NCBI RefSeq assembly: GCF_947568905.1
Contig: NC_079170.1
Coordinates: 6,758,001-6,822,000 of the forward strand
From: Ostrea edulis
Taxonomy: Eukaryota
DNA length: 64,000 nucleotides
Direction: 5' to 3'
A program made the position numbers and the translations under genes. The notes under the pieces are model-generated. The model was not told the DNA's origin. It made no database searches and was given only the letters and a program-made list of their open reading frames with translations. Shown piece after piece: positions 10,501-48,700 of the stretch (the stretch's first letter is position 1; every line of letters begins with the position of its first letter).

Positions 10501-12522
10501 TTTGGAATACTAGACGTAGAAGGGGAATTCAAATGGGTAAGAAATAAGCTTTGAAATTAATTTAGTTGAGATGCAACTACATGTACTTGAATCAAAGAAG
10601 AATTCTGTTTGACTGTTGTTTAACGCCCCAGCGAGAATATTTCACTTTTGTCGAGACATAATCGAGTACACTTTCAGATGGCGTGCCACATATTTATCTA
10701 ATTGACTTTTAATAATTTTCACGTCACTTCGACATTTTTTCACTCTTAAAAATATGTTGGCACTTGTTAAGTGATTATATAGGCAATTTCTCTATAGGGC
10801 TAAATTCTACTCTTGCAAGTGACATCACTTATTAATCCGAGCGCTTGGAACCGTGTCGCTACTCCTAACTCTTAGCGCGGCTGGGATCCGAACCCGGCAA
10901 CAATCTTCTGGTCTCAAAGCAATCGTTATACTTATTTAACAACCATGACTAGTATCAAATTCTTCATACGGTTCCTTATTGTCAACTGTCACGAAAACCT
11001 CTGTTTTAAGGTCTCATCCGAAGGACCCATGACCTTCTCTTCTTTCTGGCGAACACTTGGCGATGAAGTAATTACTGCTCAAGTTAAAGGATTCTGTTCT
11101 AGCATGTCTTGACACCATAAAGCATTTAGATAATCAATGTACAGATGTTTCAGCTTAGTTGTTTAGTGAAGTACGTAATTTTTCTGTTTTAGGAATTATA
11201 AATACTGCAAAACTTCATAGAGTTAGGTTCCCATTTGATCTTTCGAGAGTAGTTGACAATTTCCATGCGACACTTACAAAGGAACTCTGTTCATCCCCGG
11301 AAAATGCTGTCTTTCTTCCCAGAAAACTGGAAGTTCGTTCAAGGTAAGGATGATTTTTGATTGATTGATTGATTTTTTATGTTTTCCGCCACACTCAACA
11401 ATTTTTCAGTTATAAGGTGGCGCCCATTTTTTTGTTGGTGGAAGAGAGAACCTAGATACAATGCACCTGGGAAGAGACCACCGACCTTCCGAAAGTAAAC
11501 TGGGAAACTTTCTCACTTACCGGCGCGAGCAGGATTCGAACGCTCTAATCACTCGGCCACGGAGGCCCCTCAGGATGATTTTTGTATACTTGAATAAGAT
11601 AAGACAAATTAAATTCTGTACATTAATATGAATGTCATGTCTAAGCTTTTTATCTTTGTATCAACATAAATTTTAAAGTTGCGTTAAAAATTGATAAAGC
11701 TTTAGAAGGTCACTTGCTACAAAATTTCTTCACAAATGATGATGAAAATGGATACTACATGTAGATATATGTTTATGTAAGTGAAATGAATAGATTTCAC
11801 TGCAGGAAAGTTAACTTGATTTTTATCACGTTTTCTCAATAAACAGTGGGATAATCTTGTATAGATTTACATAGTTAGGGATGATATTTTACAATTTTGA
11901 ACATCATAAAAAATATACAAGTTCCAAATATTTTAAGATCGAGTTTAATGATTGCAACCAGAATAACTCAACAAATAAAGCATATATATTTTAAACCCTT
12001 GCATATATTTTATGTAGCAAGTGTCCTACATAAAGAAATTTGAAAGTTCTATTTAAAAGATTTACTGACGTGTGTTTGAGTAGCTAAAATTCAATAATGA
12101 CAGGGAGACTTGTCTTTGTCGTGAAACAGCACGAGGGTGGTCATTTTTACATAGATGAAAGAAAACAACGAAAAACAAAATCTGATTATGGCTAGCCCAA
12201 GGACTATCGTAAAGTTACGAAATTCTAAAAGTTTACGATGAACTCTGGAACTTAGAAAAGCCTAAGCCTGGGTGTTATTCAAAGTATTTAGGAACATATC
12301 CCTGTATTCTCTATAGGATTGTTTTAGATTGAGTAATGCTTATTATGATAATGAACATTAATATATTCACCTTTTTCTCATGTTTTTAACTTATAATTCA
12401 ATGCTACGATTTTCAGCGACGAACCTCGTATCCTTCTGCAGTATCACGCTTCTTGTCAAAAAACAACAGAAAGCACAAGGGGCGAGAAAACAATAGAAAG
12501 CACAAGGGTGGGGAAACAGTGA
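1561..12522 (+). CDS. Delta/Serrate (DSL-family)-like protein: MNNL/C2 domain + atypical DSL + about 56 EGF repeats; 5' signal-peptide exon(s) not identified
   Basis: Exons by eye: ~1561 (or 1621)-1744, 3676-3851, 3984-4102, 4216-10536, 11193-11343 and probable last exon 12417-12522; donors/acceptors are GT/AG and phases join. FNFCYR...SVTYGSKVGNSTNPQFLEVDNW|KKYLDKISVNVYD..RLIY..QNW..LQLTYKVYC parallels the Delta/Jagged MNNL domain; CSEGYYGSECTAHCPGNPRKCVVNGHTYCKMGWGGTNC keeps all six DSL cysteines. First acceptor and last exon are the least certain. Confidence 0.8.
1802..2746 (+). mobile_element. Non-autonomous Helentron-type element (HINE) with degenerate tandem core repeats
   Basis: 5' TTTAGCTCGCCTGAGC...GCTCAAGTGAGC subterminal motif, GTC microsatellite, repeated GGGGCCACAATAGGGG cores, 3' end CACGTGCGCGATGTGACCTATGGGCTTCTGTT; architecture of bivalve Pearl/HINE elements. 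Confidence 0.7.
4216..10536 (+). CDS. Giant 6321-nt internal exon encoding about 56 EGF-like repeats
   Basis: Acceptor tgtag|GT TGG at 4216, donor ATG G|gtaaga at 10536; open frame throughout (supplied ORF 4332-10547). 53 six-Cys and 3 truncated four-Cys EGF modules counted by eye; several have D/N-x-D/N-E-C calcium-binding starts. Confidence 0.95.
5355..6131 (+). repeat. Coding tandem repeat, 7 x 111 bp (one EGF module each)
   Basis: K[IV]D[YF]CNNQ[HR]CSNHGTCRNGNTKYTCNCNPG[YF][TI]GTNCE repeated seven times, near-identical at DNA level. Confidence 0.95.
6132..7680 (+). repeat. Coding block duplication, 2 x 774 bp (7 EGF modules each)
   Basis: EGF18-24 repeated as EGF25-31; shadow ORFs at 6457/7231 and 6505/7279 are offset by exactly 774 nt. 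Confidence 0.9.
10610..11030 (-). mobile_element. Degenerate SINE-like fragments (contain the Harbinger empty target site at 10908-10910)
   Basis: Tail-like TTGTTTAACGCCCCAGCGAGAATATTTCACT, B-box-like GGGATCCGAACCCGG and AAGGTCTCATCCGAAGGACC motifs of the kind found in bivalve tRNA-derived SINEs. Confidence 0.45.
11360..11571 (-). mobile_element. tRNA-derived SINE with 13-bp target-site duplication (duplicate at ~31077-31331)
   Basis: GGGGCCTCCGTGGCCGAGTG A-box head, GGTTCGAATCC B-box (intact only in copy B), (ATCA)n tail; AGGATGATTTTTG at 11347-11359 and 11572-11584. Confidence 0.85.
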
Positions 12523-12957
12523 CCATTCTCTGACCTTCAACCAAGGACAAATTAAAAGAATAACCTTATAAAATTTTAACTGAATATGTTTATTTTCCTA
12601 TCGTTGTGTTTTAATTTCTTTTACATTATATAATATATTTCAGTCAAAAAGAATGATTTAATTTGTAAATCAGTGTAGCATATGCTTAGGCAAACTTACT
12701 ATCTTTTTATTCAGAATTAGATTGTTGTTGTTGTTCAGTAAACCGACAAGATATGATTTGTATTTAATGTCAAACCTCTTCAAATATATGTTATCCCCCC
12801 TACAATTAGGGTTAACAGCACTAATTTTACAATAATATTGTTCAAAGGGGAAAAATCAAAGGATTACTAATGAAGAAATCTGTGGCTAAATCGAAAAAGT
12901 TCCGCCATTTTGATTCTGATAGTGTGGTAGACCATTGTATTTTAAAAGATGAGTTAC

Positions 12958-13140
12958 AGAGGTGGGTCTAGAGGAGGGGGTTATGGGGGTTGTATATCAG
13001 GCGCGGATCTAGAGACGGGGTTACGGCGATCGTACCTGAGGTGGTGTTACGGGGGTTGTACATCAGTGGCGGATCTAGAAGCGGGGTTATGGGGGTTGTA
13101 CATCAGAGGCGGATCTAGAGACGGGGTTATGGGAGTTGCC
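12958..13140. repeat. GC-rich ~37-bp tandem repeat resembling a DNA-transposon terminus (duplicate ~32718-32900)
   Basis: CAGTGGCGGATCTAGAAGCGGGGTTATGGGGGTTGTACAT-like unit about 5 times; CAG(T/G)GGCGGATC is a common MITE terminal motif. Confidence 0.6.
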
Positions 13141-13784
13141 ACCAATCCCTTTGGTCGAATTATTTTCAAAAATGGTAATTAGTCATCAGTAGAATTATCA
13201 CGTTAAACATCACTTTAAGTACAAGCATTGTAATGCAATCATATCATTTATATAGTATTTATCATTGTATGCATTATATATTTCATATTGCTCATATTCA
13301 AGTATAATACCATCTGGTAGGCATAAAAATGTCAATAATGTATACATGTTGTAAAACAATTAAATTTGATGTGATAACATTCTCTACCTCCTATTGTGCA
13401 CAGATTTGTATTGCAATTCAATTTATTAAAACATACTGCATAATTACCGCCTTTTTCACGTTCGGTGTACAGTGACATGTACATGTATCACATTTCATAT
13501 TGAGAATTAAAATATTCAATGTAGGAAATGTAGACGCAGTAATATAGTTGATTTCTAAATTTTTAATTCTAATCACAAGAATGCATTATCAAGTATAAGG
13601 TCATAAAAAGGCAAGACGGGGAGAAATGAGGACAGGAATTTATTTTCACCTGTCAGACTGAGTGTTTGGTACCCTGTTGACACATACGCCATTGCTTCAC
13701 ACATAAAAGGCGGTCACCTGAATGCTCTTTTGCAAAGCGTATTGGTGAACAATGAAATAATTTCAAAAGATATCGAATGTTATG

Positions 13785-14325
13785 ATGAAAGGTGAAAATA
13801 GCCAACAGTGATCAATCTCATAACTCCTATAAGGAATACAAAATAGAGAGTTTGGCAAACACGGACCCCTGGATATACCAGAGGTGGGATCAGGTGCCTA
13901 GGAGGAGTCAGCATCCCCTGTCGACCGGTCACACCCGCCGTGAGCCCTATATTTTGATAAGGTAAACGGAGTAATCCGTAGTCAAAATCAGTGTGCCAAT
14001 AACGGTCTGAAAATCGGTATGAAACACGTCACAGTGTTTGACCCAATGATATGTTGAATTGGCAAACTAGATCGTTATAACGACCATGCTGGCTTAAAAC
14101 AAGACCGTTGAAACCCCTGTAACATCAATGTGTTTGTCAGTGGCCTGTCCTGATTTTAAAAATGATCATACGCAGAACAAGCTTTTGTGTTTAGAATCAG
14201 TTGAGATATATAAACACCATAAGTAAATGATAATGGAACATTGCTACATAATTTTGGGAAGTTGACGATGGAGATGCTGAAAACATCCCATTTGCCATAT
14301 AGTTGAGTTTTTAGTTTAACGTTAA
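13785..14325 (-). mobile_element. Penelope-like retroelement 3' fragment, degenerate RT C-terminus (duplicate ~33545-34085)
   Basis: Minus-strand translation KLKTQLYGKWDVFSISIVNFPKLCSNVPLSFTYGVYISQLI...LTNTLMLQGF resembles the LYDKRDDF.F.IVNFP.L.SNIP...YGVYISQL motif of Penelope-like RTs; contains a stop; followed by a GC-rich 3' tail. Confidence 0.7.
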
Positions 14326-15109
14326 TATTTATTTTTCAATAAAAAAGTATGAAGCAGATCAGGAAGAATTTTTTAAGAATCCAAATGCCATATGTAGTAG
14401 CACAGTACGTTTGAAATTTCCCCTTCACAGCTGTTAATATTTTCGTGGGGAGCTAAGATGAGGGGGAGGGGGGGGGGCTTGGTAGAACATTTACTGGATT
14501 CAGCAATGTATCTTTGTAAAAGTTTTTGTGAAGGTGTTTGCCAAGGAGAATAACTGTGAAAGAGGCCACGACAATCAGGATGATAATTCTGTCTCTTACA
14601 AGTAGATACATGTATACTACCTGATCCTTTAAAATCATAATGTAAATATGAGTATCAGCAATATTTGTATATCCACTTTTAAATTTGATTGTGTAGCTGG
14701 GTATCTCAGTCAGTTCACTGTTGACTGCTGATCTGTACCTGTAGATCGCAGGTTTGAATTCAGCAAAGATTTTAATATTTTCAGATTACTTTCTACTAAC
14801 TCTGCATTTTTTGACTAAATAAAGTAAATTGGAAAGGTTTCAATTTCAAAATATCGGTATACACCCTCCACTTTTTATCCAATTAAATTCCTCTCATGTG
14901 TTATTCCTCCTCTATACAGGTGACCTAATAATCATGTAAATCATCTTAACAACATTTTATGTGAAATTCTAGTCATAGAAGGTGGCCTTCTAATGACCAT
15001 ACACAAAAAATTTAAATGTTATTTGAGTTTTGTGTTTCTTGACTTTCATTATTGGATATATTTACTGTATCAAATACTGGATTCCTTTTACAAATGTACA
15101 GGAAGGGAG

Positions 15110-15450
15110 AGAATGCAATGGAGCAGACCGGGATTCGAACCCGGGCCACTTGAATCTCTAGTCAGGTGCTCTACCAACTGAGCTATCTGGCCACCAGCAA
15201 TCAAACCTGGCTGATTGCTACATCCCCCCCTCCTTAAATGTCTTCACATTTGAAAACATCAACCCAGAATCTTTATCCCCTGAAAGGCATTTTCACCTGT
15301 CACTTTCAGGCGCTGGTCTATAGCACCAACAGTAAGAAGAAGGGAGAAAATGTAACGGACCAGACCAGGATTCGAACCCCCCCCCCTCCCCTGAACCTCT
15401 AGTCAGGTGCTCTACCAATTGAGTTATCTGGCCGACGGCAACCGAACCCT
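15110..15450 (-). mobile_element. Two tRNA-like SINE-head copies in tandem (cores 15121-15192 and ~15358-15433; duplicate ~34870-35215)
   Basis: GGCCAGATAGCTCAGTTGGTAGAGCACCTGACTAGAGATTCAAGTGGCCCGGGTTCGAATCCCGG: A and B boxes, cloverleaf with 8-nt anticodon loop; same family as 49123-49195. Confidence 0.7.
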
Positions 15451-15736
15451 GCTGACCGCTAGTTAGCTAGCTATGTATATTTCAAAAATTCACATTTAAT
15501 TTTGTACACGAGGCACTAAGGCACATTTAAATTGCATGTACATTACAATAGATTCTTTTCTTTTTTTTTAATTGTGACGTCAATAGCTATATTTATATGT
15601 ACATCAAAATTAAATGTGAAATTTAAAACATACATAGCTAGCTTTCTGTATAAACATAGCTATTGACAACACAATTCAATGTTGAAAACATACAAACTCC
15701 ACAAAAAATGTATTGTATATATGTACATGCAAATTC

Positions 15737-15793
<57 letters not shown>

Positions 15794-16260
15794 GCACTGG
15801 TAACTGTAAGTCACATAAATTCAAATAATTATGATCTTACAATTTAGACTTGTGATAAGATTGGGAATAACCAAAAAAAAAATAGATTATTTAATAATTT
15901 CAGAACCACATAGCTACATTATACAAATATATAATTATATATTGATCGTGTGTTTCAGTATTATGCCTAGATATGAGGGAACAAGAAAATTGGATTTTCA
16001 TGGAATTTTGGCAGAAATAATATTTGATACGTTTCAAAAGATCTTCACATTCAAAAGCTAAATACATGTAACTGAACCTAATGCTAGGGATGAATGATTA
16101 GAACATTACATTAGAGAGTAAATATATTAGAATTTTATTCAGATTGTCATATCTTTGAAGAACATTTTTAGTGCACTAAAATTACAACACCTTCATACAA
16201 CTGACATTATTAACATCATCATGTACAAACAATCCATACACTCTATACAATATACTCCAC

Positions 16261-17078
16261 TGTACAAGTCAATATCTCTCTATCAGACAGACAAGTCAAT
16301 ATCTCTCTATCAGACAGACACTCTATACAATATATTCCTCTGTACAAGTCAATATCTCTCTATCAGACAGACAAGTCAATATCTCTCTATCAGACAGACA
16401 AGTCAATATCTTTCTATCAGACAGACAAGTCAATATCTCTCTATAAGACAGACAAGTCAATATCTCTCTATCAGACAGACAAGTCAATATCTCTCTATAA
16501 GACAGACAAGTCAATATCTCTCTATCAGACAGACAAGTCAATATCTCTCTATCAGACAGACAAGTCAATATCTCTCTATAAGACAGACAAGTCAATATCT
16601 CTCTATCAGACAGACAAGTCAATATCTCTCTATAAGACAGACAAGTTAATATCTCTCTATAAGACAGACAACTCAATATCTCTCTATCAGACAGACAAGT
16701 CAATATCTCTCTATCAGACAGACAAGACAATATCTCTCTATGAGACAGACAAGTCAATATCTCCCTATCAGACAGACAAGTCAATATTTCTCTATCAGAC
16801 AGACAAGTCAATATCTCTCTATAAGACAGACAAGTCAATATCTCTCTATCAGACAGACAAGTCAATATTTCTCTATCAGACAGACAAGTCAATATCTCTC
16901 TATAAGACAGACAAGTCAATATTTCTCTATCAGACAGACAAGTCAATATCTCTCTATAAGACAGACAAGTCAATATCTCTCTATCAGACAGACAAGTCAA
17001 TATCTCTCTATCAGATTGACACTCTATACAATACAGATGTATATTCCTCTGTACGAGTCAATATCTCTCTATCAGACA
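16261..17078. repeat. 27-bp minisatellite in 3' UTR of HEMK1 copy A
   Basis: (AGTCAATATCTCTCTATCAGACAGACA)n; explains shadow ORFs SQYLSIRQT and CLSDREILT. Confidence 0.95.
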
Positions 17079-19519
17079 AAACCGCTCTCTGTAAGTAAAA
17101 TAAAATGAAGACATTTCACTATTTACATAACATTAAAAATTATTTAAATTCTAAATGTTCGTAAGTTGAAATTTGCAAATATAATAAGCTTAAATGCATT
17201 CTAATCAATCTCTCATCTTTACTTGTGAATAGATGTAATAAGTAATGCACATTCATTTAATTTCGTCTAATATTTTAGCAGTTACATGTAAGTACAAAGA
17301 ATTCATCACGTGATTATCAGCTTATTTTTTATTTTTTTTGTGTGTGTGTTAATTTGTTTTGCTGTAGGCATTAAAGGTACAAATGCTTCAATTTTATGTT
17401 AGATTTTTTTGCATAAAGATACCAATACTGCGGTATTCTATGAATAAAATGAAGAAATAATCTCAATCAGATATATATGTAAAATAGTTTCAAAACACAA
17501 CCTGTCTTTTTATATACTTTCGATCTGAAACAAATGGAGTGCTGATCACTGACTGTTTTATCCTTACTACTACATCTACAATCTATGAACTCGATGTCTA
17601 AACTTACCAAGGCCAATTTTCTTTCCAATTACATGTGAAGAAGGCATGCGCTATGTACATATTATACAAATAAGGCTAACCGAAGATGTGTGAGAGTTAA
17701 ATTAGTCACAATTAGTCACAGTGTGAGAGTTAAATTAGTCACAGTGTGAGAGTTAAATTAGTCACAGATGAACACAATATTTTGACCTATTCCTTTCATT
17801 TGAGATGAAATCAAACAATTTACGCTGCACGAGTCATTTATACTGCCGTTATAGATACACTAACCATGTCAGTGTGAGAAACAAAAACCAATGTAATTAT
17901 TAATACACGTGTACCTCTAACGATTCATTTTAACTTATAATGTAATAATAAAACACGACAGTAACGAAGACAAGTATTTTGAAACAAAATGAGACAGTTT
18001 GGTGTCAATCAATGTCCCACACTCTCTAGTGAAATCCTCAATAGACTTGACAAATTCCTATAGTGACATTGTAGCAATTTTGCCTACCTTCTGGTGAAAT
18101 CCTCAACAGACTTGACAAATTCCTATAGTGACATTGTAACAATTTTGCCTACCTTCTGGTGAAATCCTCAATAGACTTGACAAATTCCAGTGCACAGTTT
18201 GAATCGCTGTTGATGATACTCTGTATCGTCTTGTGCTGCTCCAGACCAGTCTCAAGCCACAGTCTCCTACAAAAACAGAGAGAAAGTTCAACAACAATTT
18301 TACTGATAATTCTGCTGTTTGGGGAGGTTTGTCAAAGCTAATACCAGTGTCTGCTGTCAATATATGAAGTACATATACATGTGCTACAATCTTTGCAATA
18401 TAAGTATCTTTTGTAACAATCTACAGTTTGACACAAATACATGTATGTCAGCATATATCAAAAAACATAAATCCATTTATTTTGTTTATATTGGTTAAAT
18501 ATACTAGTTAATGTTTCATTTAAAGCAAATTTTTCAAATTACAAGTTAATTTTGAACACAATTACACAGTTTCTAGTTTTGTCACATTTCCTTTTGTTTC
18601 AAACATGATATTTTCTGTCAAAGAATCTAATTGTAAACAAAAACATGGCTCTTATGTGAGAACTGTATCTCATTTGTAACTCAACTGACATTCAATTGTT
18701 TGCTGACCATTAGAAATACCTTAATCAAACATTGTAAACATTAAAAACGGGAAAATACAATTTGAAAATTTTCAGCTCAAATCATTTCAAAGATGCATAA
18801 CTTTATAAACCAGTGATTGAAACACGTTTACTGAATCCATACCCATTCTTCTTCAATAACATGGGGGAAACGGCTAGCAAATGTCTTATGAAATCCAGTC
18901 CATCAGTCCCACCGTCCAACGCCCCCCTGTCTTCATATCTAAAATATGCGCAAAGTAAAAACCGTCAGACAAAACAATCACATCATATAATACATGTCAT
19001 TCAATTTCATATCCATTGTACAGATTCAGAATGGCACTGAACTGCGTCCAGTGTGTTTTACCTTCTGACCTCTGGGTCAAGGTCATCAATATCTGCTGTG
19101 GGTATATACGGAGGGTTGCTAACGATGATATCAAATGGACCAAGTCGAGATAAGTATTGCATAGTCTCTGTAAAACCATCAATGAATGAATTACTATGAC
19201 TGTTTAAATCAACTGCACTTTTTTTATCATCTCACAACCATGTTGAGAATCATGATGATGTATTTAAAAGTTATGAGAAAAACAGAACAAACTTTCTTGT
19301 GTTTTTAAATGCTGATACACACATAGTATTTCAATCCTGATTTCAAAAAATTCAAACATCTTCCACTTTATCATTCCACTACAGCCTAACTTTGTATCCT
19401 ATGTAGAAGAACGGTGTAAAGCCTGTCATTTCTGACCTTGCAGTGTTACATGTGATTACATGAGGGAATTAAATGAAGAATGCTATACCTTCAACAGATG
19501 ATGAAGAAATTTCACATTC

Positions 19520-21287: not shown

Positions 21288-21646
21288 TACGATGTCTTCA
21301 TCAAGGTAGGATAAATTCCTTATCAATCAAAATGGAGGAATTATATTAATCTATTTCATTATATTTTTTAAATTTTAGGACTCGTAAGTATATCACGGTT
21401 TTCTCACCAGTAGTTTCTCCATTTTTCGCCTCAAATCACACAATGATAATGATTGATCACGAGCGCCACTAACAAACCTGCACTTTTGAAATCCATGTTA
21501 AGGACAACAGCTCTCCCCTGCACTTGATGCTTGGTCAGGTTCTCCAGCGTAAGGTCACAGGCAACACGGCTGATATCACATGCCACGGCTGTCATCTGCA
21601 GGAATAGCAACCAAAAGTTAGAACATAGGTCCCCATAGGTTATGAT

Positions 21647-22129
21647 ACATAAATACAGACTGCATCAAGCCATAAATACAGACTGCATCAAGTTATAGAT
21701 ATCCTACATAAATACAGACTGCATCAAGTCATAAATACAGACTGCATCAAGTCATAAATACAGACTGTATCAAGTTATAGATATCCTACATAAATACAGA
21801 CTGCATCAAGTTATAGATATCCTACATAAATACAGACTGCATCAAGTCATAAATACAGACTGCATCAAGTCATAAATACAGACTGCATCAAGTTATAGAT
21901 ATCCTACATAAATACAGACTGCATCAAGTTATAGATATCCTACATAAATACAGACTGCATCAAGTTATAGATATCCTACATAAATACAGACTGCATCAAG
22001 TTATAGATATCCTACATAAATACAGACTGCATCAAGTTATAGATATCCTACATAAATACAGACTGCATCAAGTTATAAATACAGACTGCATCAAGTTATA
22101 AATACAGACTGCATCAAGTTATAGATATC
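21647..22129. repeat. 36/23-bp minisatellite (CATAAATACAGACTGCATCAAGTTATAGATATCCTA)n; shorter copy at ~41347-41578
   Basis: Directly visible tandem array in HEMK1 intron 4. Confidence 0.9.
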
Positions 22130-22431
22130 CTTTGTTTACAAACTTGCCATGAAGCGAAGAATATCATTATTGTACTTAAGGTATGACAATAACTACAAAT
22201 TCTTCAGCAACATGCATGTAAATAGGATAATTATATTATTATGATGTTTATTGTGATCTTCAGTTTATGGTTTTCTAGAAAAAACACACTGAGTTCATTT
22301 GAATAATTTCATGTATAATTGTAATACTGGATTTGAAATGGAGAGAAAGAGAGAAAGTGAATGATAGAGAGATGACAAATGATCCACACTTGTGTCAATA
22401 TGCAAGGAGACTAACGTAAGTATATGACATT

Positions 22432-35200: not shown

Positions 35201-35501
35201 CGGCAACCGAACCCTGCTGACCGCTAGTTAGCTAGCTATGTATATTTCAAAAATTCACATTTAATTTTGTACACGAGGCACTAAGGCACATTTAAATTGC
35301 ATGTACATTACAATAGATTCTTTTCTTTTTTTTTAATTGTGACGTCAATAGCTATATTTATATGTACATCAAAATTAAATGTGAAATTTAAAACATACAT
35401 AGCTAGCTTTCTGTATAAACATAGCTATTGACAACACAATTCAATGTTGAAAACATACAAACTCCACAAAAAATGTATTGTATATATGTACATGCAAATT
35501 C

Positions 35502-35540
<39 letters not shown>

Positions 35541-36771: not shown

Positions 36772-39700
36772 AAACCGCTCTCTGTAAGTAAAATAAAATG
36801 AAGACATTTCACTATTTACATAACATTAAAAATTATTTAAATTCTAAATGTTCGTAAGTTGAAATTTGCAAATATAATAAGCTTAAATGCATTCTAATCA
36901 ATCTCTCATCTTTACTTGTGAATAGATGTAATAAGTAATGCACATTCATTTAATTTCGTCTAATATTTTAGCAGTTACATGTAAGTACAAAGAATTCATC
37001 ACGTGATTATCAGCTTATTTTTTATTTTTTTTGTGTGTGTGTTAATTTGTTTTGCTGTAGGCATTAAAGGTACAAATGCTTCAATTTTATGTTAGATTTT
37101 TTTGCATAAAGATACCAATACTGCGGTATTCTATGAATAAAATGAAGAAATAATCTCAATCAGATATATATGTAAAATAGTTTCAAAACACAACCTGTCT
37201 TTTTATATACTTTCGATCTGAAACAAATGGAGTGCTGATCACTGACTGTTTTATCCTTACTACTACATCTACAATCTATGAACTCGATGTCTAAACTTAC
37301 CAAGGCCAATTTTCTTTCCAATTACATGTGAAGAAGGCATGCGCTATGTACATATTATACAAATAAGGCTAACCGAAGATGTGTGAGAGTTAAATTAGTC
37401 ACAATTAGTCACAGTGTGAGAGTTAAATTAGTCACAGTGTGAGAGTTAAATTAGTCACAGATGAACACAATATTTTGACCTATTCCTTTCATTTGAGATG
37501 AAATCAAACAATTTACGCTGCACGAGTCATTTATACTGCCGTTATAGATACACTAACCATGTCAGTGTGAGAAACAAAAACCAATGTAATTATTAATACA
37601 CGTGTACCTCTAACGATTCATTTTAACTTATAATGTAATAATAAAACACGACAGTAACGAAGACAAGTATTTTGAAACAAAATGAGACAGTTTGGTGTCA
37701 ATCAATGTCCCACACTCTCTAGTGAAATCCTCAATAGACTTGACAAATTCCTATAGTGACATTGTAGCAATTTTGCCTACCTTCTGGTGAAATCCTCAAC
37801 AGACTTGACAAATTCCTATAGTGACATTGTAACAATTTTGCCTACCTTCTGGTGAAATCCTCAATAGACTTGACAAATTCCAGTGCACAGTTTGAATCGC
37901 TGTTGATGATACTCTGTATCGTCTTGTGCTGCTCCAGACCAGTCTCAAGCCACAGTCTCCTACAAAAACAGAGAGAAAGTTCAACAACAATTTTACTGAT
38001 AATTCTGCTGTTTGGGGAGGTTTGTCAAAGCTAATACCAGTGTCTGCTGTCAATATATGAAGTACATATACATGTGCTACAATCTTTGCAATATAAGTAT
38101 CTTTTGTAACAATCTACAGTTTGACACAAATACATGTATGTCAGCATATATCAAAAAACATAAATCCATTTATTTTGTTTATATTGGTTAAATATACTAG
38201 TTAATGTTTCATTTAAAGCAAATTTTTCAAATTACAAGTTAATTTTGAACACAATTACACAGTTTCTAGTTTTGTCACATTTCCTTTTGTTTCAAACATG
38301 ATATTTTCTGTCAAAGAATCCAATTGTAAACAAAAACATGGCTCTTATGTGAGAACTGTATCTCATTTGTAACTCAACTGACATTCAATTGTTTGCTGAC
38401 CATTAGAAATACCTTAATCAAACATTGTAAACATTAAAAACGGGAAAATACAATTTGAAAATTTTCAGCTCAAATCATTTCAAAGATGCATAACTTTATA
38501 AACCAGTGATTGAAACACGTTTACTGAATCCATACCCATTCTTCTTCAATAACATGGGGGAAACGGCTAGCAAATGTCTTATGAAATCCAGTCCATCAGT
38601 CCCACCGTCCAACGCCCCCCTGTCTTCATATCTAAAATATGCGCAAAGTAAAAACCGTCAGACAAAACAATCACATCATATAATACATGTCATTCAATTT
38701 CATATCCATTGTACAGATTCAGAATGGCACTGAACTGTGTCCAGTGTGTTTTACCTTCTGACCTCTGGGTCAAGGTCATCAATATCTGCTGTGGGTATAT
38801 ACGGAGGGTTGCTAACGATGATATCAAATGGACCAAGTCGAGATAAGTATTGCATAGTCTCTGTAAAACCATCAATGAATGAATTACTATGACTGTTTAA
38901 ATCAACTGCACTTTTTTTATCATCTCACAACCATGTTGAGAATCATGATGATGTATTTAAAAGTTATGAGAAAAACAGAACAAACTTTCTTGTGTTTTTA
39001 AATGCTGATACACACATAGTATTTCAATCCTGATTTCAAAAAATTCAAACATCTTCCACTTTATCATTCCACTACAGCCTAACTTTGTATCCTATGTAGA
39101 AGAACGGTGTAAAGCCTGTCATTTCTGACCTTGCAGTGTTACATGTGATTACATGAGGGAATTAAATGAAGAATGCTATACCTTCAACAGATGATGAAGA
39201 AATTTCACATTCACAAGAGGCCCACAGACCATATCACTCACCTGAGTCACCTTGGCTCTGCTGTTGTGATTTCTAAAACAGACTTTTATTTCAATCTTTA
39301 TTACCATATTATAACCCCAACTTAGCACCATAAGGTCACGACATAAACAAAAATTGAAAGTATGGGATAATTAACTTCTAATTTCTAATGATTTTATTCT
39401 AATTAAGATAATATTGAGGGTAAGAAATAAAGTAAATTTAATATATTTATGCCATAAATTCTAAATGAATGAAATTTAATTATTTTTTTATTAATCAATC
39501 GAAAATGTGTATCCAATATTTTTTTACCCCCGATTGCCCATCACTAGCTCTACCTTAAAGAGTTCAGGAGATATTGAATAGGTTAGTTTTCCTTAAAAGA
39601 GGTCAAACTCCAAGATCAGTGTCACAAGGTTAAAATCTTCGGTACCATGTCACAAGGAACATGCTTAGCCTTATGAAATATGAAAGCCCTATCACTCGCC

Positions 39701-42700
39701 ATTCAAAAGTTATGAGCAAGGTTAGAGCTTCAGACAAGACAGACAGACAGACAGACAGGACAAAAAGAGTCGCAGAAAGTTGCAAGGGCATTAGAAAAAC
39801 TGGAATGTTATCTCTCTTCTAGCACATGTTGTTGGAACAAATGTTCGAAGATCAACTTGCATGAAATACCGTGGATGCTATTTGAATGAACAATTAAATT
39901 TCAAAAAACTTGTAAGCAAAAAATGCAGGACCATCTCATTGAATATATTCCAAATTAGACAAATTCATAAATAACTAACGCAGGATTCGTGCAGACAGTT
40001 AATACAACCTTTATTGATTAGTCATCTTGATTATACTAACAGTGTGCTATACTGCCTACCAAATTGTACTTATTCAAACGACTGCAACTCCTTCAAAATC
40101 ATGCTGTAAAAGTTGTTTTAAAATGGAAATCTACTGACAGTTCAAGAGAAGCCCTAAAGAGTCTGCATTGGTTACCTGTCCAGTATATTTTAGAATCATA
40201 TTTAAGATTGCTTGTATCGTTTTTAAATGTCTCAATGAGAGTGACACTCCTTTATATCTTAACAATATGTTGAGCATGAGAAGGTCAGCCTATGACACCC
40301 AATCTGTTGACGTTGGAACCAAAACACTCATTATTCCGGCCGTTAAACGAAAAACGTTTGCATCAAGACCATTCTCACTAGCAGGACCAACCGTGTGGAA
40401 CGAGCTGTCACAAAATATTAGGACAATAACTGAATATACCTATTTTAAACGCCATCTGAAAACATTTTATTTCACTACTGCCTTTTACTAACTGTTACAC
40501 ACATGTCAATTTCACTATTAATAATATTACGATATTAACTTTTTTACTTGTGTAATGTTTTACTTCTGTACAGTGCCTTTGATATCTTTTATTATAAAAT
40601 TGTGCACTTTATGAATTGTAATAATAAATTGTGATAATAAGAATCCACACATTTTGGAAACATTTGCACTTGGATCTGATTTATGGTAGTGTAGCCCAGT
40701 GGTTCTTAAGAAGAAGATTTTTAAATGATCCCAAACCAATTTTGCCTTTTCTTAATTATCTCCCCTTTTAAGGAGGCATGGACCTTCATTTGAAGAAACT
40801 AAAATCTCCTTTACCAAAGAAGGATTTGTACCAATTTTGATTGAAATTGGCTCAGTGACGTGGTTCTGGAGAAGAGGAAAATGTGAAAAGTTAACAGACA
40901 GACCATGAACAGACAGACGACAGACAAAGGAGTTAAAGGTCATCAGAAAAAGCTCACATGGGCGGGCTTTTAGCTCAGGTGAGCTAATACGATGTCTTCA
41001 TCAAGGTAGGATAAATTCCTTATCAATCAAAATGGAGGAATTATATTAATCTATTTCATTATATTTTTTAAATTTTAGGACTCGTAAGTATATCACGGTT
41101 TTCTCACCAGTAGTTTCTCCATTTTTCGCCTCAAATCACACAATGATAATGATTGATCACGAGCGCCACTAACAAACCTGCACTTTTGAAATCCATGTTA
41201 AGGACAACAGCTCTCCCCTGCACTTGATGCTTGGTCAGGTTCTCCAGCGTAAGGTCACAGGCAACACAGCTGATATCACATGCCACGGCTGTCATCTGCA
41301 GGAATAGCAACCAAAAGTTAGAACATAGGTCCCCATAGGTTATGATACATAAATACAGACTGCATCAAGTCATAAATACAGACTGCATCAAGTTATAGAT
41401 ATCCTACATAAATACAGACTGCATCAAGTCATAAATACAGACTGTATCAAGTTATAGATATCCTACATAAATACAGACTGCATCAAGTTATAGATATCCT
41501 ACATAAATACAGACTGCATCAAGTTATAAATACAGACTGCATCAAGTTATAAATACAGACTGCATCAAGTTATAGATATCCTTTGTTTACAAACTTGCCA
41601 TGAAGCGAAGAATATCATTATTGTACTTAAGGTATGACAATAACTACAAATTCTTCAGCAACATGCATGTAAATAGGATAATTATATTATTATGATGTTT
41701 ATTGTGATCTTCAGTTTATGGTTTTGTAGAAAAAACACACTGAGTTCATTTGAATAATTTCATGTATAATTGTAATACTGGATTTGAAATGGAGAGAAAG
41801 AGAGAAAGTGAATGATAGAGAGATGACAAATGATCCACACTTGTGTCAATATGCAAGGAGACTAATGTAAGTATATGACATTGTGATATGTGTGTCTGTG
41901 TGTGCTGTATACAGTTTGTATGAGTTGATATGTGTGTCTGTGTGTGCTGTATACAGCTTGATGAGTTGATATGTGTGTCTGTGCGTGCTATATACAGCTT
42001 GTATGAGTTGATATGTGTGTCTGTGTGTGCTGTATACAGCTTGATGAGTTGATATGTGTGTCTGTGTGTGCTATATACAGCTTGATGAGTTGATATGTAT
42101 GTCTGTGTGTGCTATATACAGCTTGATGAGTTGATATGTGTCTGTGTGTGTTGTATACAGCTTGATGAGTTGATATGTATGTCTGTGTGTGTATGTCTGT
42201 GTGTGTATGTCTGTGTGTGTGTGTCTGTGTGTGCTATATACAGCTTGATGAGTTGATATGTATGTCTGTGTGTGCTATATACAGCTTGATGAGTTGATAT
42301 GTATGTCTGTGTGTGTATGTCTGTGTGTGTATGTCTGTGTGTGTATGTCTGTGTGTGCTATATACAGCTTGATGAGTTGATATCTGTGTCTGTGTGTGCT
42401 GTATACAGCTTGATGAGTTGATATGTGTGTCTGTGTGTGCTGTATACAGCTTGATGAGTTCATATGTATGTCTGTGTGTGTATGTCTGTGTGTGTGTGTC
42501 TGTGTGTGCTATATACAGCTTGATGAGTTAATATGTATGTCTGTGTGTGCTATATACAGCTTGATGAGTTGATATGTGTGTCTGTGTGTGCAGTATACAG
42601 CTTGATGAGTTGATATGTATGTCTGTGTGTGCTATATACAGCTTGATGAGTTGATATGTATGTCTGTGTGTGCTATATACAGCTTGATGAGTTGATATGT

Positions 42701-45700
42701 GTGTCTGTGTGTGCTATATACAGCTTGATGAGTTGATATGTGTGTCTGTGTGTGCTGTATACAGCTTGACGAGTTCATATGTATGTCTGTGTGTATGTCT
42801 GTGTGTGCTGTATACAGCTTGATGGGTTGATATGTATGTCTGTGTGTGCTATATACAGCTTGATGAATTGATATGTGTGTCTGTGTGTGCTGTATACAGC
42901 TTGATGAGTTGATATGTGTGTCTGTGTGTGCTGTATACAGCTTGATGAGTTGATATGTATGTCTGTGTGTGTATGTCTGTGTGTGCTGTATACAGCTTGA
43001 TGAGTTGATATGTATGTCTGTGTGTGCTATATACAGCTTGATGAGTTGATATGTGTGTCTGTGTGTGTATGTCTGTGTGTGCTATATACAGCTTGATGAG
43101 TTGATATGTGTGTCTGTGTGTGCTGTATACAGCTTGATGAGTTGATATGTGTGTCTGTGTGTGCTGTATACAGCTTGATGAGTTGATATGTGTGTCTGTG
43201 TGTGTATGTCTGTGTGTGTGTGTCTGTGTGTGCTATATACAGCTTGATGAGTTGATATGTGTGTCTGTGTGTGCTGTATACAGCTTGATGAGTTGATATG
43301 TGTGTCTGTGTGTGTATGTCTGTGTGTGTGTGTGTGTCTGTGTGTGCTATATACAGCTTGATGAGTTGATATGTGTGTCTGTGTGTGCTGTATACAGCTT
43401 CACGAGTTGATATGTGTGTCTGTGTGTGTATGTCTGTGTGTGTATGTCTGTGTGTGCTATATACAGCTTGATGAGTTGATATGTGTGTCTGTGTGTGCTG
43501 TATACAGCTTCACGAGTTGATATGTGTGTCTGTGTGTGTATGTCTGTGTGTGTATGTCTGTGTGTGCTATATACAGCTTGATGAGTTGATATGTGTGTCT
43601 GTGTGTGCTGTATACAGCTTGATGAGTTGATATGTATGTCTGTGTGTGTATGTTTGTGTGTGCTATATACAGCTTGACGAGTTGATATGTATGTTTGTGT
43701 GTGTATGTCTGTGTGTGTGTGTCTGTGTGTGTATGTCTGTGTGTGCTATATACAGCTTGATGGGTTGATATGTGTGTCTGTGTGTGCTGTATACAGCTTG
43801 ATGAGTTGATATGTGTGTCTGTGTGTGCTGTATACAGCTTGATGAGTTGATATGTATGTCTGTGTGTGTATGTCTGTGTGTGCTGTATACAGCTTGATGA
43901 GTTGATATGTATGTCTGTGTGTGCTATATACAGCTTGATGAGTTGATATGTGTGTCTGTGTGTGTTGTATACAGCTTGATGAGTTGATATGTGTGTCTGT
44001 GTGTGCTGTATACAGCTTGATGAGTTGATATGTGTATCTGTGTGTGTGCGTCTGTGTGTGTATGTCTGTGTGTGCTATATACAGCTTGATGAGTTGATAT
44101 GTGTGTCTGTGTGTGCTGTATACAGATTGATGAGTTGATATGTATGTCTGTGTGTGTATGTCTGTGTGTGTATGTCTGTGTGTGTTCTATACAGCTTGAT
44201 GAGTTGATATGTGTGTCTGTGTGTGTGTGTCTGTGTGTGTATGTCTGTGTGTGCTATATACAGCTTGATGAGTTGATATGTGTGTCTGTGTGTGCTATAT
44301 ACAGTTTGTATGAGTTGATATGTGTGTCTGTGTGTGCTATATACAGCTTCATGAGTTGATATGTGTGTCTGTGTGTGCTATATACAGCTTGATGAGTTGA
44401 TATGTATGTCTGTGTGTGCTATATACAGCTTGATGAGTTGATATGTGTGTCTGTGTGTGCTATATACAGCTTGATGAGTTGATATGTATGTCTGTGTGTG
44501 CTATATACAGCTTGATGAGTTGATATGTATGTCCGTGTGTGCTGTATACAGCTTGATGAGTTGATATGTGTGTCTGTGTGTGCTATATACAGCTTGATGA
44601 GTTGATATGTATGTCCGTGTGTGCTGTATACAGCTTGATGAGTTGATATGTGTGTCTGTGTGTGCTGTATACAGCTTGACGAGTTGATATGTATGTCTGT
44701 GTGTATGTCTGTGTGTGCTGTATACAGCTTGATGAGTTGATATGTGTGTCTGTGTGTGCTGTATACAGCTTGACGAGTTGATATGTATGTCTGTGTGTGC
44801 TATATACAGCTTGATGAGTTGATATGTATGTCTGTGTGTGCTGTATACAGCTTGACGAGTTGATATGTATGTCTGTGTGTGCTATATACAGNNNNNNNNN
44901 NNNNNNNNNNNNNNNNNNNNNNNNNNNNNNNNNNNNNNNNNNNNNNNNNNNNNNNNNNNNNNNNNNNNNNNNNNNNNNNNNNNNNNNNNNNNNNNNNNNN
45001 NNNNNNNNNNNNNNNNNNNNNNNNNNNNNNNGATGAGTTGATATGTGTCTGTGTGTGCTGTATACAGCTTGACGAGTTGATATGTATGTCTGTGTGTATG
45101 TCTGTGTGTGCTGTATACAGCTTGATGAGTTGATATGTATGTCTGTGTGTGCTATATACAGCTTGATGAGTTGATATGTGTGTCTGTGTGTGCTGTATAC
45201 AGCTTGATGAATTGATATGTGTGTCTGTGTGTGTATGTCTGTGTGAGCTATATACAGCTTGACGAGTTGATATGTATGTCTGTGTGTGTATGTCTGTGTG
45301 TGCTGTATACAGCTTGATCAGTTGATATGTATGTCTGTGTGTGCTATATACAGCTTGATGAGTTGATATGTATGTCAGGGTGTGCTGTATACAGCTTAAT
45401 GAGTTGATATGTATGTCCGTGTGTGCTGTATACAGCTTGACGAGTTGATATATATGTCTGTGTGTGCTATATACAGCTTGATGAGTTGATATGTATGTCT
45501 GGGTGTGCTGTATACAGCTTGATGAGTTGATATGTATGTCCGTGTGTGCTGTATACAGCTTGACGAGTTGATATGTATGTCTGTGTGTGTATGTCTGTGT
45601 GTGCTGTATACAGCTTGATCAGTTGATATGTATGTCTGTGTGTGCTATATACAGCTTGATGAGTTGATATGTGTGTCTGTGTGTGTTGTATACAGCTTGA

Positions 45701-48700
45701 TGAGTTGATATGTGTGTCTGTGTGTGCTGTATACAGCTTGATGAGTTGATGTGTGTCTGTGTGTGTGCGTCTGTGTGTGTATGTCTGTGTGTGCTATATA
45801 CAGCTTGATGAGTTGATATGTGTGTCTGTGTGTGCTGTATACAGATTGATGAGTTGATATGTATGTCTGTGTGTGTATGTCTGTGTGTGTTCTATACAGC
45901 TTGATGAGTTGATATGTGTGTCTGTGTGTGTGTGTCTGTGTGTGTATGTCTGTGTGTGCTATATACAGCTTGATGAGTTGATATGTGTGTATGTGTGTGC
46001 TGTATACAGCTTGATGAGTTGATATGTGTGTCTGTGTGTGCTGTATACAGCTTGATGAGTTGATATGTATGTCTATGTGTGCTATATACAGCTTGATGAG
46101 TTGATATGTATGTCTGTGTGTGCTATATACAGCTTGATGAGTTGATATGTGTGTCTGTGTGTGATATATACAGCTTGATGAGTTGATATGTGTGTCTGTG
46201 TGTGCTGTATACAGCTTGATGAGTTGATATGTATGTCTGTGTGTGCTGTATACAGCTTGATGAGTTGATATGTATGTCTGTGTGTGCTATATACAGCTTG
46301 ATGAGTTGATATGTATGTCTGTGTGTGCTATATACAGCTTGATGAGTTGATATGTATGTCTGTGTGTGTATGTCTGTGTGTGTATGTCTGTGTTTGCTAT
46401 ATACAGGTTGATGAGTTGATATGTGTCTGTGTGTGTTGTATACAGCTTGATGAGTTGATATATGTGTCTGTGTGTGCTATATACAGCTTGATGAGTTGAT
46501 ATGTGTGTCTGTGTGTGCTATATACAGCTTGATGAGTTGATATGTGTGTCTGGGTGTGCTGTATACAGCTTGATGAGTTGATATGTATGTCTGTGTGTGC
46601 TGTATACAGCTTGATGAGTTGATATGTATGTCTGTGTGTGTATGTCTGTGTGTGCTGTATACAGCTTGATGAGTTGATATGTATGTCTGTGTGTGCTGTA
46701 TACAGCTTGATGAGTTGATATGTATGTCTGTGTGTGCTATATACAGCTTGATGAGTTGATATGTATGTCTGTGTGTGCTCTATACAGCTTGATGAGTTGA
46801 TATGTATGTCTGTGTGTGTATGTCTGTGTGTGTGTGTATGTCTGTGTGTGCTATATACAGCTTGACGAGTTATGTATGTCTGTGTGTGTATGTCTGTGTG
46901 TGCTGTATACGGTTTGATGAGTTGTCCATACTGTATGTCCTTCCTCTTAAGTGTGTTGTCTGTATGTCTTCCCTGCTCAGTATGTATGTGTTTCATGTTT
47001 AATGTGCTGCTTGTATGTCTTCCGTGTACATCTTTTGCAATAAATAAGTCAAAAAAGGAAAAGGAAATTACCCAAGGCAGTTTGGACAGTAAGCACAGAG
47101 TTACTGCCCCTGATCCACAGCCCACCTCCAGGAATGTCCGACAAGACTTATTCTGTCCCACATGTTGTATCATATACTGAACCAGTTCCTGTAGAAGTTC
47201 ATAGGAAGCATGTGAACAATCTGTGTGAAACTGAATATCAGGGAACTTATAGATTATTTATCAAATTTATGTTATCACATGCTTAGTGATAAACTTCAGT
47301 TATTTTTTCCTTCTTTTCATTACTTGAATCTAGAGCCCATACATTTCTGTGTAATTCTTCATGATTATCTTTTAACTAAATAACTGTGTCATGATGTGTT
47401 TTGTTTAAACATTAAAGTTTGTTATCTAGGCCTTGACATGTATTGTAATAAAATGGTTTCTTTAATAGCTTGCAATTATATATAAGTCAAGTGACAACGT
47501 CGTTCATGCATCAAAATTCATAAAATGAAGGTGGAATAAATAGAATACTACATGATACAATCTAAATCATAGCCCTCCATCTGATTCAAGGCCACTCAGG
47601 CTGGTATGACATAATTTACCTATCTAATATTATCCTATATGATATTAATCAATGTACATTATATAATATTAATCAATGTACAGTATATAATATTACTGTA
47701 CTTACCTCAGTTTCCGGTCTGGGAATGAGGACTGGTGGAGATAATTTAACAGTAACTGTACCTACCTCAATTTCCGGTCTGGGAATGTGGACTGGTGGAG
47801 ATAATTTAACAGTAACTGTACCTACCTCAGTTTCTGGTCTGGGGATGAGGACTGGTGGAGATAATTTAACAATAACTGTACCTACCTCAGTTTCCGGTCT
47901 GGGAATGTGGACTGGTGGAGATAATTTAACAGTAACTGTACCTACCTCAGTTTCCGGTCTCGGAATGAGGACTGGTGAAGATAATTTAACAGTAACTGTA
48001 CCTACCTCAGTTTCCGGTCTCGGAATGAGGACTGGTGAAGATAATTTAACAGTAACTGTACCTACCTCAGTTTCCGGTCTCGGAATGAGGACTGGTGAAG
48101 ATAATTTAACAGTAACTGTACCTACCTCAGTTTCTGGTCTCAGAATGAGGACTGGATGAGATAATTTAACAGTAACTGTACCTACCTCAGTTTCCGGTCT
48201 GGGGATGATGACTGGTGGAGATAATTTAACAGTAACTGTACCTACCTCAGTTTCTGGTCTGGGGATGAGGACTGGTGGAGATAATTTAACAGTAACTGTA
48301 CCTACCTCAGTTTCCGGTCTGGGGATGAGGACTGGTGGAGATAATTTAACTGTAAATTCATGGAAATCCCATTCCTGGATGACATATTGAAGTGGCATTC
48401 TAAAAATAGGAAGGGGGGGGGGGGGGTGGGTTGGGTTATAGCTTCTTAGACAAAATAGTTATCTAACTGTAATGAGGATTAGAAAATTATTATTAATTTA
48501 AAATAATAAATAATAGCATATTACCTTTCCATACGCTTCATTGCCAATTCATTAATTCGTGTTAGCTGTGCTTCATTGATAATCTGTCCTCCGGGAACTT
48601 GATGAAACTACAATAGTGATGATGGCGAGTTGTGAAATTGTAAAATTATATTCCCTGCTGCCTATGTAATTTTTGTATTTTAGTTGGGATGTAATTTCAT

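What the first reader, a model, noticed from the sequence alone, without database searches (positions are those of the whole stretch)
10908..47553. 14.5-kb tandem duplication with half a Harbinger at the junction and an empty site in the first copy
Seen: copy B starts exactly at the transposon's right terminus (..GGCGGGGC|CTGGTCTC), copy A has the same site empty (..CAATCTT|CTGGTCTC), and the element is cut internally at its left where copy A ends; no transposon remnant follows copy B. Inference: either an exchange between an insertion-free chromosome (break in HEMK1 intron 3) and the interior of a Harbinger inserted at 10908 on the homologue, or one-ended/alternative transposition, or a false duplication joining two haplotypes that differ by the insertion.
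Basis: partly seen in the sequence, partly recalled or inferred. Interest (0 to 1): 0.7.

Follow-up and report, generated by a model that had tools for sequence, protein, structure and literature searches.

The report
Real tandem duplication with one-ended Harbinger
A 14.5-kb piece of a flat-oyster chromosome is present twice in a row with a one-ended Harbinger transposon between the copies; read-derived contigs show that the odd junction exists in real DNA, so it is a real and apparently polymorphic transposon-associated duplication of a known general kind.

Summary
Copy A is 10908-25459. Copy B is 30625-47553. A 5,165-bp Harbinger lies between them.

- The element keeps 80% of a 6,428-bp family member, not half. 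It lacks the left inverted repeat and the first Myb exon.
- Copy B is longer (16,929 bp) only because its 41-bp satellite array is longer. The N run lies inside that array.

The right junction is a canonical insertion junction. It is followed by CTG, and the flank is CWG in 6 of 6 family copies. The same CTG is unoccupied at the head of copy A. The left junction is blunt, has no homology, and lies in unique DNA.

The artefact reading is now unlikely. A read-derived contig from run X2 (k-mer depth 60) bridges 25459/25460 with 410 + 69 nt. There is no gap between the copies. The segment occurs nowhere else in the assembly. Run X1 carries the unduplicated allele, so the duplication appears polymorphic.

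Best reading: a Harbinger inserted at CTG 10908, and an end-joining exchange then joined an intron break to the element's interior. A one-step aberrant transposition cannot be excluded.

This is a new member of a known kind (transposon-associated tandem duplication), of modest interest. The scan had not noted this structure before on other DNA.

The parts
4332..10547 (+). Context: last long exon/ORF (2,071 aa) of an EGF-repeat (Notch-ligand-like) gene. Its stop codon is 360 bp before the duplication start.
   Evidence: ORF list. Pfam EGF 3.5e-56 and EGF_CA 1e-34 on 9000-10547.
10908..25459 (.). Copy A of the duplicated segment (14,552 bp). It holds intergenic DNA plus the 3' part of a HemK/PrmC-type methyltransferase gene (minus strand), with no promoter or first exons.
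   Evidence: Self-BLAST, pairwise alignment, NPPY and GCGSG exons.
10908..10910 (.). Unoccupied CTG target (J1, ...CAATCTT|CTGGTCTC). The same CTG follows the transposon terminus at 30625-30627.
   Evidence: The region is unique in the genome.
22433..24739 (.). 41-bp (with 55/96/123-bp variants) TG-rich satellite inside the HemK-like intron, copy A, about 53.5 units.
   Evidence: TRF.
25459..25460 (.). J2: blunt junction of intron DNA (...ACTACAT) to position 1230 of the Harbinger. There is no microhomology. Base 25460 (A) matches neither partner.
   Evidence: Bridged by X2 contig record 17, laid on 25050-25528 at depth 60.4.
25460..30624 (-). One-ended Harbinger (T'): positions 1230-6428 of a 6,428-bp family member. 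It keeps the right TIR and the transposase exons. It lacks the left TIR and Myb exon 1.
   Evidence: 99.45% identity to the C1 copy, L002. Full-length ends defined.
25460..26168 (+). Remnant of the Myb/SANT-like gene: later exon-like frames at 25460-25696 and 25935-26168. The first exon, with the Myb_DNA-bind_5 start, is lost.
   Evidence: Frames. Myb_DNA-bind_5 3.6e-5 on the lost exon in L002:7432-7605.
27554..30453 (-). Transposase gene pieces: N-terminal frame 29992-30453, DDE middle exon 28168-28380, DDE C-terminal exon 27554-27997. The two large ORFs are identical to those of the full-length C1 copy.
30607..30624 (.). Right terminal inverted repeat (18 bp, perfect complement of the family's left end GCCCCGCCGTCATAAAAC).
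30624..30627 (.). J3: transposon terminus followed by the CTG target and the start of copy B.
   Evidence: The X17 contig starts exactly at 30625, as expected when that position has two different left neighbours.
30625..47553 (.). Copy B (16,929 bp including 140 N). It continues on the right into the upstream part of the HemK-like gene, so this copy belongs to the intact gene.
41884..46888 (.). The same satellite in copy B, about 122 units, containing the N run.
   Evidence: TRF.
44892..45031 (.). N run (140). Both flanks are satellite, and the length is compatible with the array register. It is irrelevant to the junctions.
47553..47554 (.). J4: end of copy B into unique downstream DNA (...ACTACAT|GATACAATC). 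There is no transposon remnant and no CWG.

Best explanation
This is a real tandem duplication allele in the genome of the flat oyster (assembly identity inferred), not an assembly join. The two junctions of the central element were made in different ways.

Shown:
- J3 (30624/30625) is a canonical Harbinger integration junction: an exact terminus followed by a CTG target.
- The same CTG is intact at the head of copy A.
- J2 (25459/25460) is a blunt, homology-free join between unique intron DNA and position 1230 of the element, inside its Myb-like gene.
- J2 exists in reads.

Inferred order of events:
1. A complete element inserted at CTG 10908.
2. A two-break end-joining exchange (or a replication template switch) joined a chromatid broken in the HemK-like intron to the interior of the element on the other chromatid. 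This gave U - R - T' - R - D, where U is the unique DNA left of 10908, R the duplicated segment, T' the truncated Harbinger and D the unique DNA right of 47553.
3. The head of copy A is empty for one of two reasons. Either the partner was the insertion-free homologue, or a complete upstream element later excised precisely, as PIF/Harbinger elements usually do.

The junction copy has only one end and cannot excise, so it remains.

Consequences: one intact HemK-like gene (downstream DNA + copy B) and one promoterless 3' copy (copy A). Copy A lies downstream of, and in the same orientation as, the transposase gene.
For: - Duplication and exact junctions.
- R occurs only twice in the 895-Mb assembly, both times here.
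- Both outer boundaries lie in unique sequence.
- Genuine terminus and CWG target in 6/6 copies, with an 18-bp perfect TIR.
- Truncation at position 1230 of 6,428, with loss of the left TIR and Myb exon 1.
- No other element fragment in the window.
- J2 is bridged by X2 contig record 17 (552 nt, depth 60.4; 410 nt on the R side within the stretch and 69 nt in T', only 1 other letter).
- X1 contigs run through 25459 and 30625 into sequence unlike T', which is the unduplicated allele.
- The X17 contig starts exactly at 30625.
- The assembly matches a HiFi/hifiasm assembly of 894.8 Mb in 52 scaffolds (PMC10979132). There is no N between the copies.
- PIF/Harbinger elements generally excise precisely (PMC4561436 abstract).
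Against: - I saw no single long molecule that covers R tail, T' and R start together. The contig evidence bridges J2 only.
- J3 bridging pieces were not among the rows shown.
- X2 may be the specimen the assembly came from. If so, the junction is confirmed in reads but not in a second animal.
- A primary hifiasm assembly is a pseudo-haplotype, so the empty J1 is not proven to be in cis with J2.
- Depth over R against its flanks could not be measured. The raw-read run gave about 1.5x, and I had only one read-laying run.
- The X2 contig does not break at 25459, although an R-to-D branch should exist there (unexplained).
- No allele with a complete element at 10908 has been seen.
Confidence: 0.6

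Rival explanations
1. One-step, transposase-driven aberrant transposition. Only the right end of a Harbinger was integrated at CTG 10908 of the sister chromatid or homologue. Possible routes are one-ended integration, sister-chromatid or reversed-ends type alternative transposition, or uncoordinated gap repair after excision. The other, degraded or partly synthesised, end was then end-joined to a break in the intron. A variant: sister-chromatid transposition of a complete element first gave R-T-R, and a later deletion removed the element's first 1,229 bp together with adjacent DNA.
For: - J3 is a canonical target junction, while the head of copy A and the tail of copy B carry no element at all. 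A single inter-chromatid event explains this without a later excision.
- In maize Ac/Ds, alternative transposition makes tandem direct duplications with an element, sometimes a fractured one, at the junction. One breakpoint there also lacks an element (PMC3744419).
- Aborted re-replication repaired by end joining gives transposon-flanked segmental duplications (PMC4270019 abstract).
- The family looks active: copies are 99-100% identical and the transposase ORFs are identical to the full-length copy.
Against: - J2 is not at a transposon terminus and has no target-site signature. The transposase did not make it.
- The known alternative-transposition products keep a second element at one border. 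None is present here.
- It needs a coincident break in the intron.
- No reciprocal deletion allele is known.
Confidence: 0.25
2. Assembly artefact. Two haplotypes that differ by the Harbinger insertion were laid head to tail, and no chromosome carries two copies.
For: - The copies differ by only about 0.2-0.3% plus indels, which is in the range of allelic differences.
- Oyster assemblies are prone to haplotypic duplication. 33 were removed by hand from this one (PMC10979132).
- Depth could not be measured.
- An N run lies inside copy B.
Against: - J2 joins the R tail to the interior of the element. No simple insertion haplotype contains that junction, yet it is present in read-derived contigs at depth 60.
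- There is no gap between the copies, and J1-J3 lie on continuous sequence of a HiFi assembly.
- T' (5.2 kb) is shorter than HiFi reads.
- A rescue would need a second, non-canonical truncated insertion exactly at the other boundary.
Confidence: 0.07
3. Unequal homologous recombination (NAHR) between two Harbinger copies, or other dispersed repeats, that flank the segment.
For: NAHR is the standard model for tandem duplications (PMC3744419).
Against: - NAHR would leave a complete element at the junction and elements at the borders. Here the element is truncated at a non-homologous blunt junction, and there is no element at either outer border.
- Both borders are unique sequence.
Confidence: 0.02

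Closest known systems
Tandem direct duplications made by alternative (reversed-ends / sister-chromatid) transposition of maize Ac/fAc (Zhang, Zuo & Peterson 2013, PMC3744419; re-replication composite insertions, PMC4270019)
   Same: - A direct duplication with a class II element, in some products a fractured one-ended element, at the junction.
- One junction is a transposon terminus at a target site that is intact in the other copy.
- One duplication border lacks any element.
   Different: - The other junction here is an internal, blunt break of the element, not a terminus or a known pre-existing flank.
- No second element remains at either border.
- No reciprocal deletion is known.
- The superfamily is different (PIF/Harbinger, 3-bp CWG target) and the host is an animal.
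- The event is inferred from one allele, not observed de novo.
Hybrid element insertion by Drosophila P elements (cited in PMC3744419; details from my own knowledge)
   Same: Ends from different chromatids insert nearby and give flanking duplications or deletions next to the element.
   Different: Those products keep both termini of the element. Here one terminus is missing.
Ordinary NHEJ or replication-based tandem duplication (copy-number variant) that happens to have one breakpoint in a transposon
   Same: A blunt, homology-free junction in unique DNA; a young event (about 0.2% divergence); polymorphic.
   Different: The head of the first copy lacks the element that should have supplied the junction fragment. 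An insertion-free partner chromosome or a later precise excision has to be added.
CWG-targeting PIF/Harbinger transposons (two-gene elements: DDE_Tnp_4 transposase + Myb/SANT-like protein)
   Same: The family here has both genes in convergent orientation, 18-bp TIRs and CWG flanks.
   Different: The window copy is a one-ended derivative, and the family carries very high-copy nested repeats.

Membership tests
PIF/Harbinger superfamily | DDE transposase of the DDE_Tnp_4 / PIF type | tested here: met
   PF13359 at 1.4e-15 on 27551-27982(-). PF13359 at 1.6e-10 on the middle exon and 1.3e-15 on the C-terminal exon of the C1 copy. The same frames are present in the window.
PIF/Harbinger superfamily | Second gene encoding a Myb/SANT-like DNA-binding protein | tested here: met
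   Myb_DNA-bind_5 at 3.6e-5 (24.1 bits, cut-off 21.7) on L002:7432-7605(-) in the full-length relative. The window copy has lost this exon and keeps only the later frames.
PIF/Harbinger superfamily | Terminal inverted repeats | tested here: met
   18-bp perfect TIR, GCCCCGCCGTCATAAAAC, in the full-length copy. The window copy has only the right one.
PIF/Harbinger superfamily | 3-bp target-site duplication (TWA or CWG) | tested here: met
   Right flanks are CWG in 6/6 copies. L007 has CAG on both sides. L002 has CAG/CTG, which is not a direct repeat.
Alternative-transposition tandem direct duplication (Ac/Ds RET/SCT type) | Transposon at the duplication junction, with a terminus joined to a target site that is intact in the other copy | tested here: met
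   J3 and J1 share the CTG target.
Alternative-transposition tandem direct duplication (Ac/Ds RET/SCT type) | The other side of the junction element is a transposon terminus or its pre-existing flank, and a partner element remains at a border | tested here: not met
   J2 is an internal blunt break. No other element fragment lies in the window. Whether J2 pre-dated the duplication cannot be told.
Alternative-transposition tandem direct duplication (Ac/Ds RET/SCT type) | Reciprocal deletion chromatid with the matching target-site duplication | not testable with these tools
   It needs population or pedigree data.
False haplotypic duplication (assembly artefact) | The junction between the copies is absent from raw reads | tested here: not met
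   X2 contig record 17 bridges 25459/25460 with 410 + 69 nt at depth 60.4.
False haplotypic duplication (assembly artefact) | The copies meet at a contig end or gap | tested here: not met
   The only N run is 44892-45031, inside copy B's satellite.
False haplotypic duplication (assembly artefact) | Each copy is at half the depth of its flanks | tested here: inconclusive
   The raw-read run X24 was read at about 1.5x and gave 0-3 reads on the flanks. Logan word depths are not copy numbers.
NAHR duplication | Homologous repeats at both borders and a complete recombinant repeat at the junction | tested here: not met
   The borders are unique. The junction element is truncated and there are no border elements.

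The most novel reading that the evidence does not exclude
The structure is the direct product of a single aberrant Harbinger transposition. One end integrated into the sister chromatid or homologue, and the other end was lost and end-joined. That would make it a natural example in an animal of PIF/Harbinger alternative or one-ended transposition creating a segmental duplication, as Ac/Ds does in maize. The partial HemK-like copy sits downstream of the transposase gene in the same orientation, so it could also give a chimeric transcript.
Probability: 0.2. Interest if true: 0.6.

Novelty: new member of a known kind. Interest (0 to 1): 0.33.

Why it matters
- For users of this reference, the two copies are real sequence and should not be purged. 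Genotyping and read mapping around the HemK-like gene will show copy-number variation between animals.
- For transposon biology, this is a clean natural allele that links an apparently active CWG-type Harbinger family to a 20-kb duplication in a mollusc. One junction was made by the transposase and one by repair.
- If population data show that no complete-element allele ever existed, it would extend alternative or one-ended transposition as a source of duplications to PIF/Harbinger elements in animals.
- The duplication itself contains no complete gene, so a phenotypic effect is not expected.

Tried and rejected
- The repeat finder on the whole window was swamped by a 38-bp satellite. I replaced it with self-BLAST.
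- I first suspected that the element was complete, because genomic matches started at query position 2-5 and short derivatives carry both ends. Aligned flanks and the true left terminus 1,229 bp further out rejected this.
- The tRNA-like look of the sequence at the break led nowhere: ARAGORN found nothing.
- NAHR and repeat-mediated exchange are rejected. The borders are unique and there are no flanking elements.
- The raw-read run X24 was too shallow (about 6% of the run read) to give depth or junction reads on the flanks.
- Copy number cannot be inferred from Logan word depths. The stretch has no single-copy control, and the R start and R tail depths disagree in X2 and X17.
My plan to fetch contigs from other samples through ORFs next to or across the junctions could not be run.
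- Earlier scan notes hold nothing similar.
- I searched the host gene exon by exon only. I did not build or search a joined spliced model.
- I did not try to fill the N run.
Full report
**Observation**

A self-BLAST of the window and direct reading of the junctions confirm a direct repeat.
- Copy A is 10908-25459 (14,552 bp).
- Copy B is 30625-47553 (16,929 bp including 140 N).
- They are separated by 5,165 bp (25460-30624).

Outside a 27-bp minisatellite, the unique parts differ by about 20 substitutions in about 10 kb. There are also eight indels (43, 27, 27, 23, 18, 7, 4 and 1 bp). The 614-bp tail has three substitutions.

The length difference comes from a 41-bp TG-rich satellite: 53.5 units in A against about 122 in B.

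The N run 44892-45031 lies inside that array. Both flanks are satellite in the same orientation and non-coding. A length of 140 equals 3 + 2x41 + 55, which is in register with the array's 41- and 55-nt units. Eight of the 101 lengths between 100 and 200 would be in register. The N run has no bearing on the junctions. I did not try to fill it.

**The element**

The insert carries DDE_Tnp_4 transposase exons on the minus strand.

A search of the window's own assembly found a 99.45% identical copy on another chromosome (locus L002) and many short internally deleted derivatives. Alignment of flanks gave two results:
- The right end ...GACGGCGGGGC is the true terminus. It is followed by CWG in 6 of 6 copies.
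- On the left, the other copies continue beyond window position 25460.

The full-length relative is 6,428 bp, with an 18-bp perfect terminal inverted repeat. It has the classic two-gene Harbinger layout. The transposase reads in from one end. A Myb_DNA-bind_5 gene reads in from the other.

The window copy starts at position 1230. It has therefore lost the left inverted repeat and the first Myb exon, and it keeps about 80% of the element, not half. Its two large transposase ORFs are identical to those of the full-length copy. No other fragment of the element lies anywhere in the window.

**Host context**

The segment to the left of the duplication ends with a 2,071-aa EGF-repeat ORF. Its stop codon is 360 bp before 10908.

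The duplicated segment holds exons of a HemK/PrmC-type methyltransferase on the minus strand. The best exon-level matches are NCBIfam PrmC. The NPPY exon is at 19061-19231 and 38754-38924, and the GCGSG exon lies in frames 24702-25163 and 46400-47257.

I searched exon by exon only and left out the step of joining a spliced model.

Copy B joins the upstream part of the gene and so belongs to an intact gene. Copy A is a promoterless 3' copy. It lies downstream of the transposase gene and in the same orientation.

**Is it an artefact?**

The assembly statistics (894,786,893 bases in 52 sequences) match the Darwin Tree of Life flat-oyster assembly. That assembly was built from 38x HiFi reads with hifiasm, purge_dups and YaHS (PMC10979132). 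The runs that hold the stretch are labelled as an oyster. This identification is an inference.

The points against an artefact are these:
- There is no gap between the copies.
- The segment occurs only twice in the assembly, both times here.
- I laid three sets of read-derived contigs and one raw-read run on 25050-31049. In run X2 one contig (552 nt, word depth 60.4) lies on 25050-25528 with a single differing letter. It bridges 25459/25460 with 410 and 69 nt.
- A junction of the intron tail to the element's interior cannot come from a simple insertion haplotype. The rearranged junction therefore exists in DNA molecules.

In run X1, one contig runs 201 nt past 25459 into sequence unlike the element. 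A 3.7-kb contig runs past 30625 likewise. X1 therefore carries the unduplicated allele, and the duplication appears polymorphic.

In X17 a contig starts exactly at 30625. This is what a de Bruijn graph gives when that position has two different left neighbours.

The raw-read run was read at only about 1.5x and gave nothing on the flanks.

Caveats:
- X2 may be the specimen behind the assembly.
- I saw no single molecule that covers both junctions.
- Depth over the segment against its flanks could not be measured.
- A primary hifiasm assembly does not prove that the empty site at 10908 is in cis with the junction.

**Mechanism**

The two junctions have different origins.
- J3 has every mark of a transposase-made integration: an exact terminus and a CTG target. 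The same CTG is unoccupied at the head of copy A.
- J2 is blunt and has no microhomology. Its one ambiguous base (25460) matches neither partner. It lies in unique DNA. This is the signature of end joining.

Homologous recombination between elements is excluded, for three reasons. The junction element is truncated, no elements flank the duplication, and both borders are unique.

The simplest account has two steps:
1. A complete element inserted at 10908.
2. A chromatid broken in the intron was joined to the interior of that element on another chromatid.

The empty head of copy A then means one of two things. Either the partner was the insertion-free homologue, or a complete upstream element later excised precisely. 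PIF/Harbinger elements generally excise precisely (PMC4561436). The one-ended junction copy cannot excise.

A one-step aberrant transposition is the main rival. The closest known cases are the maize Ac/fAc tandem direct duplications. They have an element at the junction and one border free of elements (PMC3744419). Related cases are the re-replication composite insertions (PMC4270019). Those products differ in two ways. They keep a second element, and their junctions are at termini. I therefore do not file this allele as a member of that class.

**Novelty and score**

Transposon-associated tandem duplications are well known. This is a clean, apparently polymorphic example that involves a young CWG-type Harbinger family in a mollusc. 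Its mechanism is unresolved. The duplicated segment contains no complete gene. Interest is modest. It would rise if population data showed a one-step transposase-driven origin.

Earlier notes of the scan hold nothing like it.

Noticed in passing
window 57137-61700: A large 38-bp satellite array of about 119 units at 93-97% identity. It dominated the repeat finder. An earlier scan note reads it as decoy splice donors after a SUMF1 exon.
   Followed up: no
window 26050-26249 and 28850-29449 (inside the Harbinger): Two nested segments with word depths hundreds to thousands of times the rest of the element in all four runs, with many inverted joints around 29206-29285. These are very high-copy small repeats carried inside this Harbinger family. 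They are also present in the C1 copy.
   Followed up: partly
L002 (G000:C1:42886241-42894439): The full-length 6,428-bp copy is flanked by CAG on one side and CTG on the other, which is not a direct repeat. Either the duplication has mutated, or this copy has itself recombined with another copy.
   Followed up: no
window 25460-25476: The truncated element differs from its 99.45% relative at three places within its first 17 nt and nowhere in the next 120 nt or so. The places are 25460, one C fewer in a C-run, and 25476. This could be a mark of error-prone repair at the junction. The C-run length also varies in other copies.
   Followed up: partly
window 25332, 25366, 30694, 30952: The unduplicated allele in run X1 has copy-A letters at the segment start and copy-B letters at its tail. 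This fits ancestral states. It equally fits an allele that collapsed from the duplication by recombination between the copies.
   Followed up: no
window 25050-25449 vs 30650-31049: In runs X2 and X17 the word depth of the segment start exceeds that of the segment tail (68-102 vs 60, and 142-214 vs 94). In X1 they are equal. Also, the X2 contig is not interrupted at 25459 as a branch to the downstream DNA would predict. Both points are unexplained.
   Followed up: no
window 16235-17015 and 35982-36708: A 27-bp minisatellite inside the duplicated segment. It holds 14 of the 34 substitutions and two 27-bp unit differences between the copies.
   Followed up: partly
window 47695-48355: Eleven 60-bp tandem units start 141 bp to the right of the duplication end. 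An earlier scan note places HEMK1 exon 3 here.
   Followed up: no
G000:C1:90070998-90072593 and C1:90239812-90241137: Two 92%-identical partial copies of the element's Myb-side region. Both end at the same internal position (about 1569-1583 of the window copy). They lie 169 kb apart in the same orientation. They may be a separate non-autonomous subfamily or a segmental duplication.
   Followed up: no
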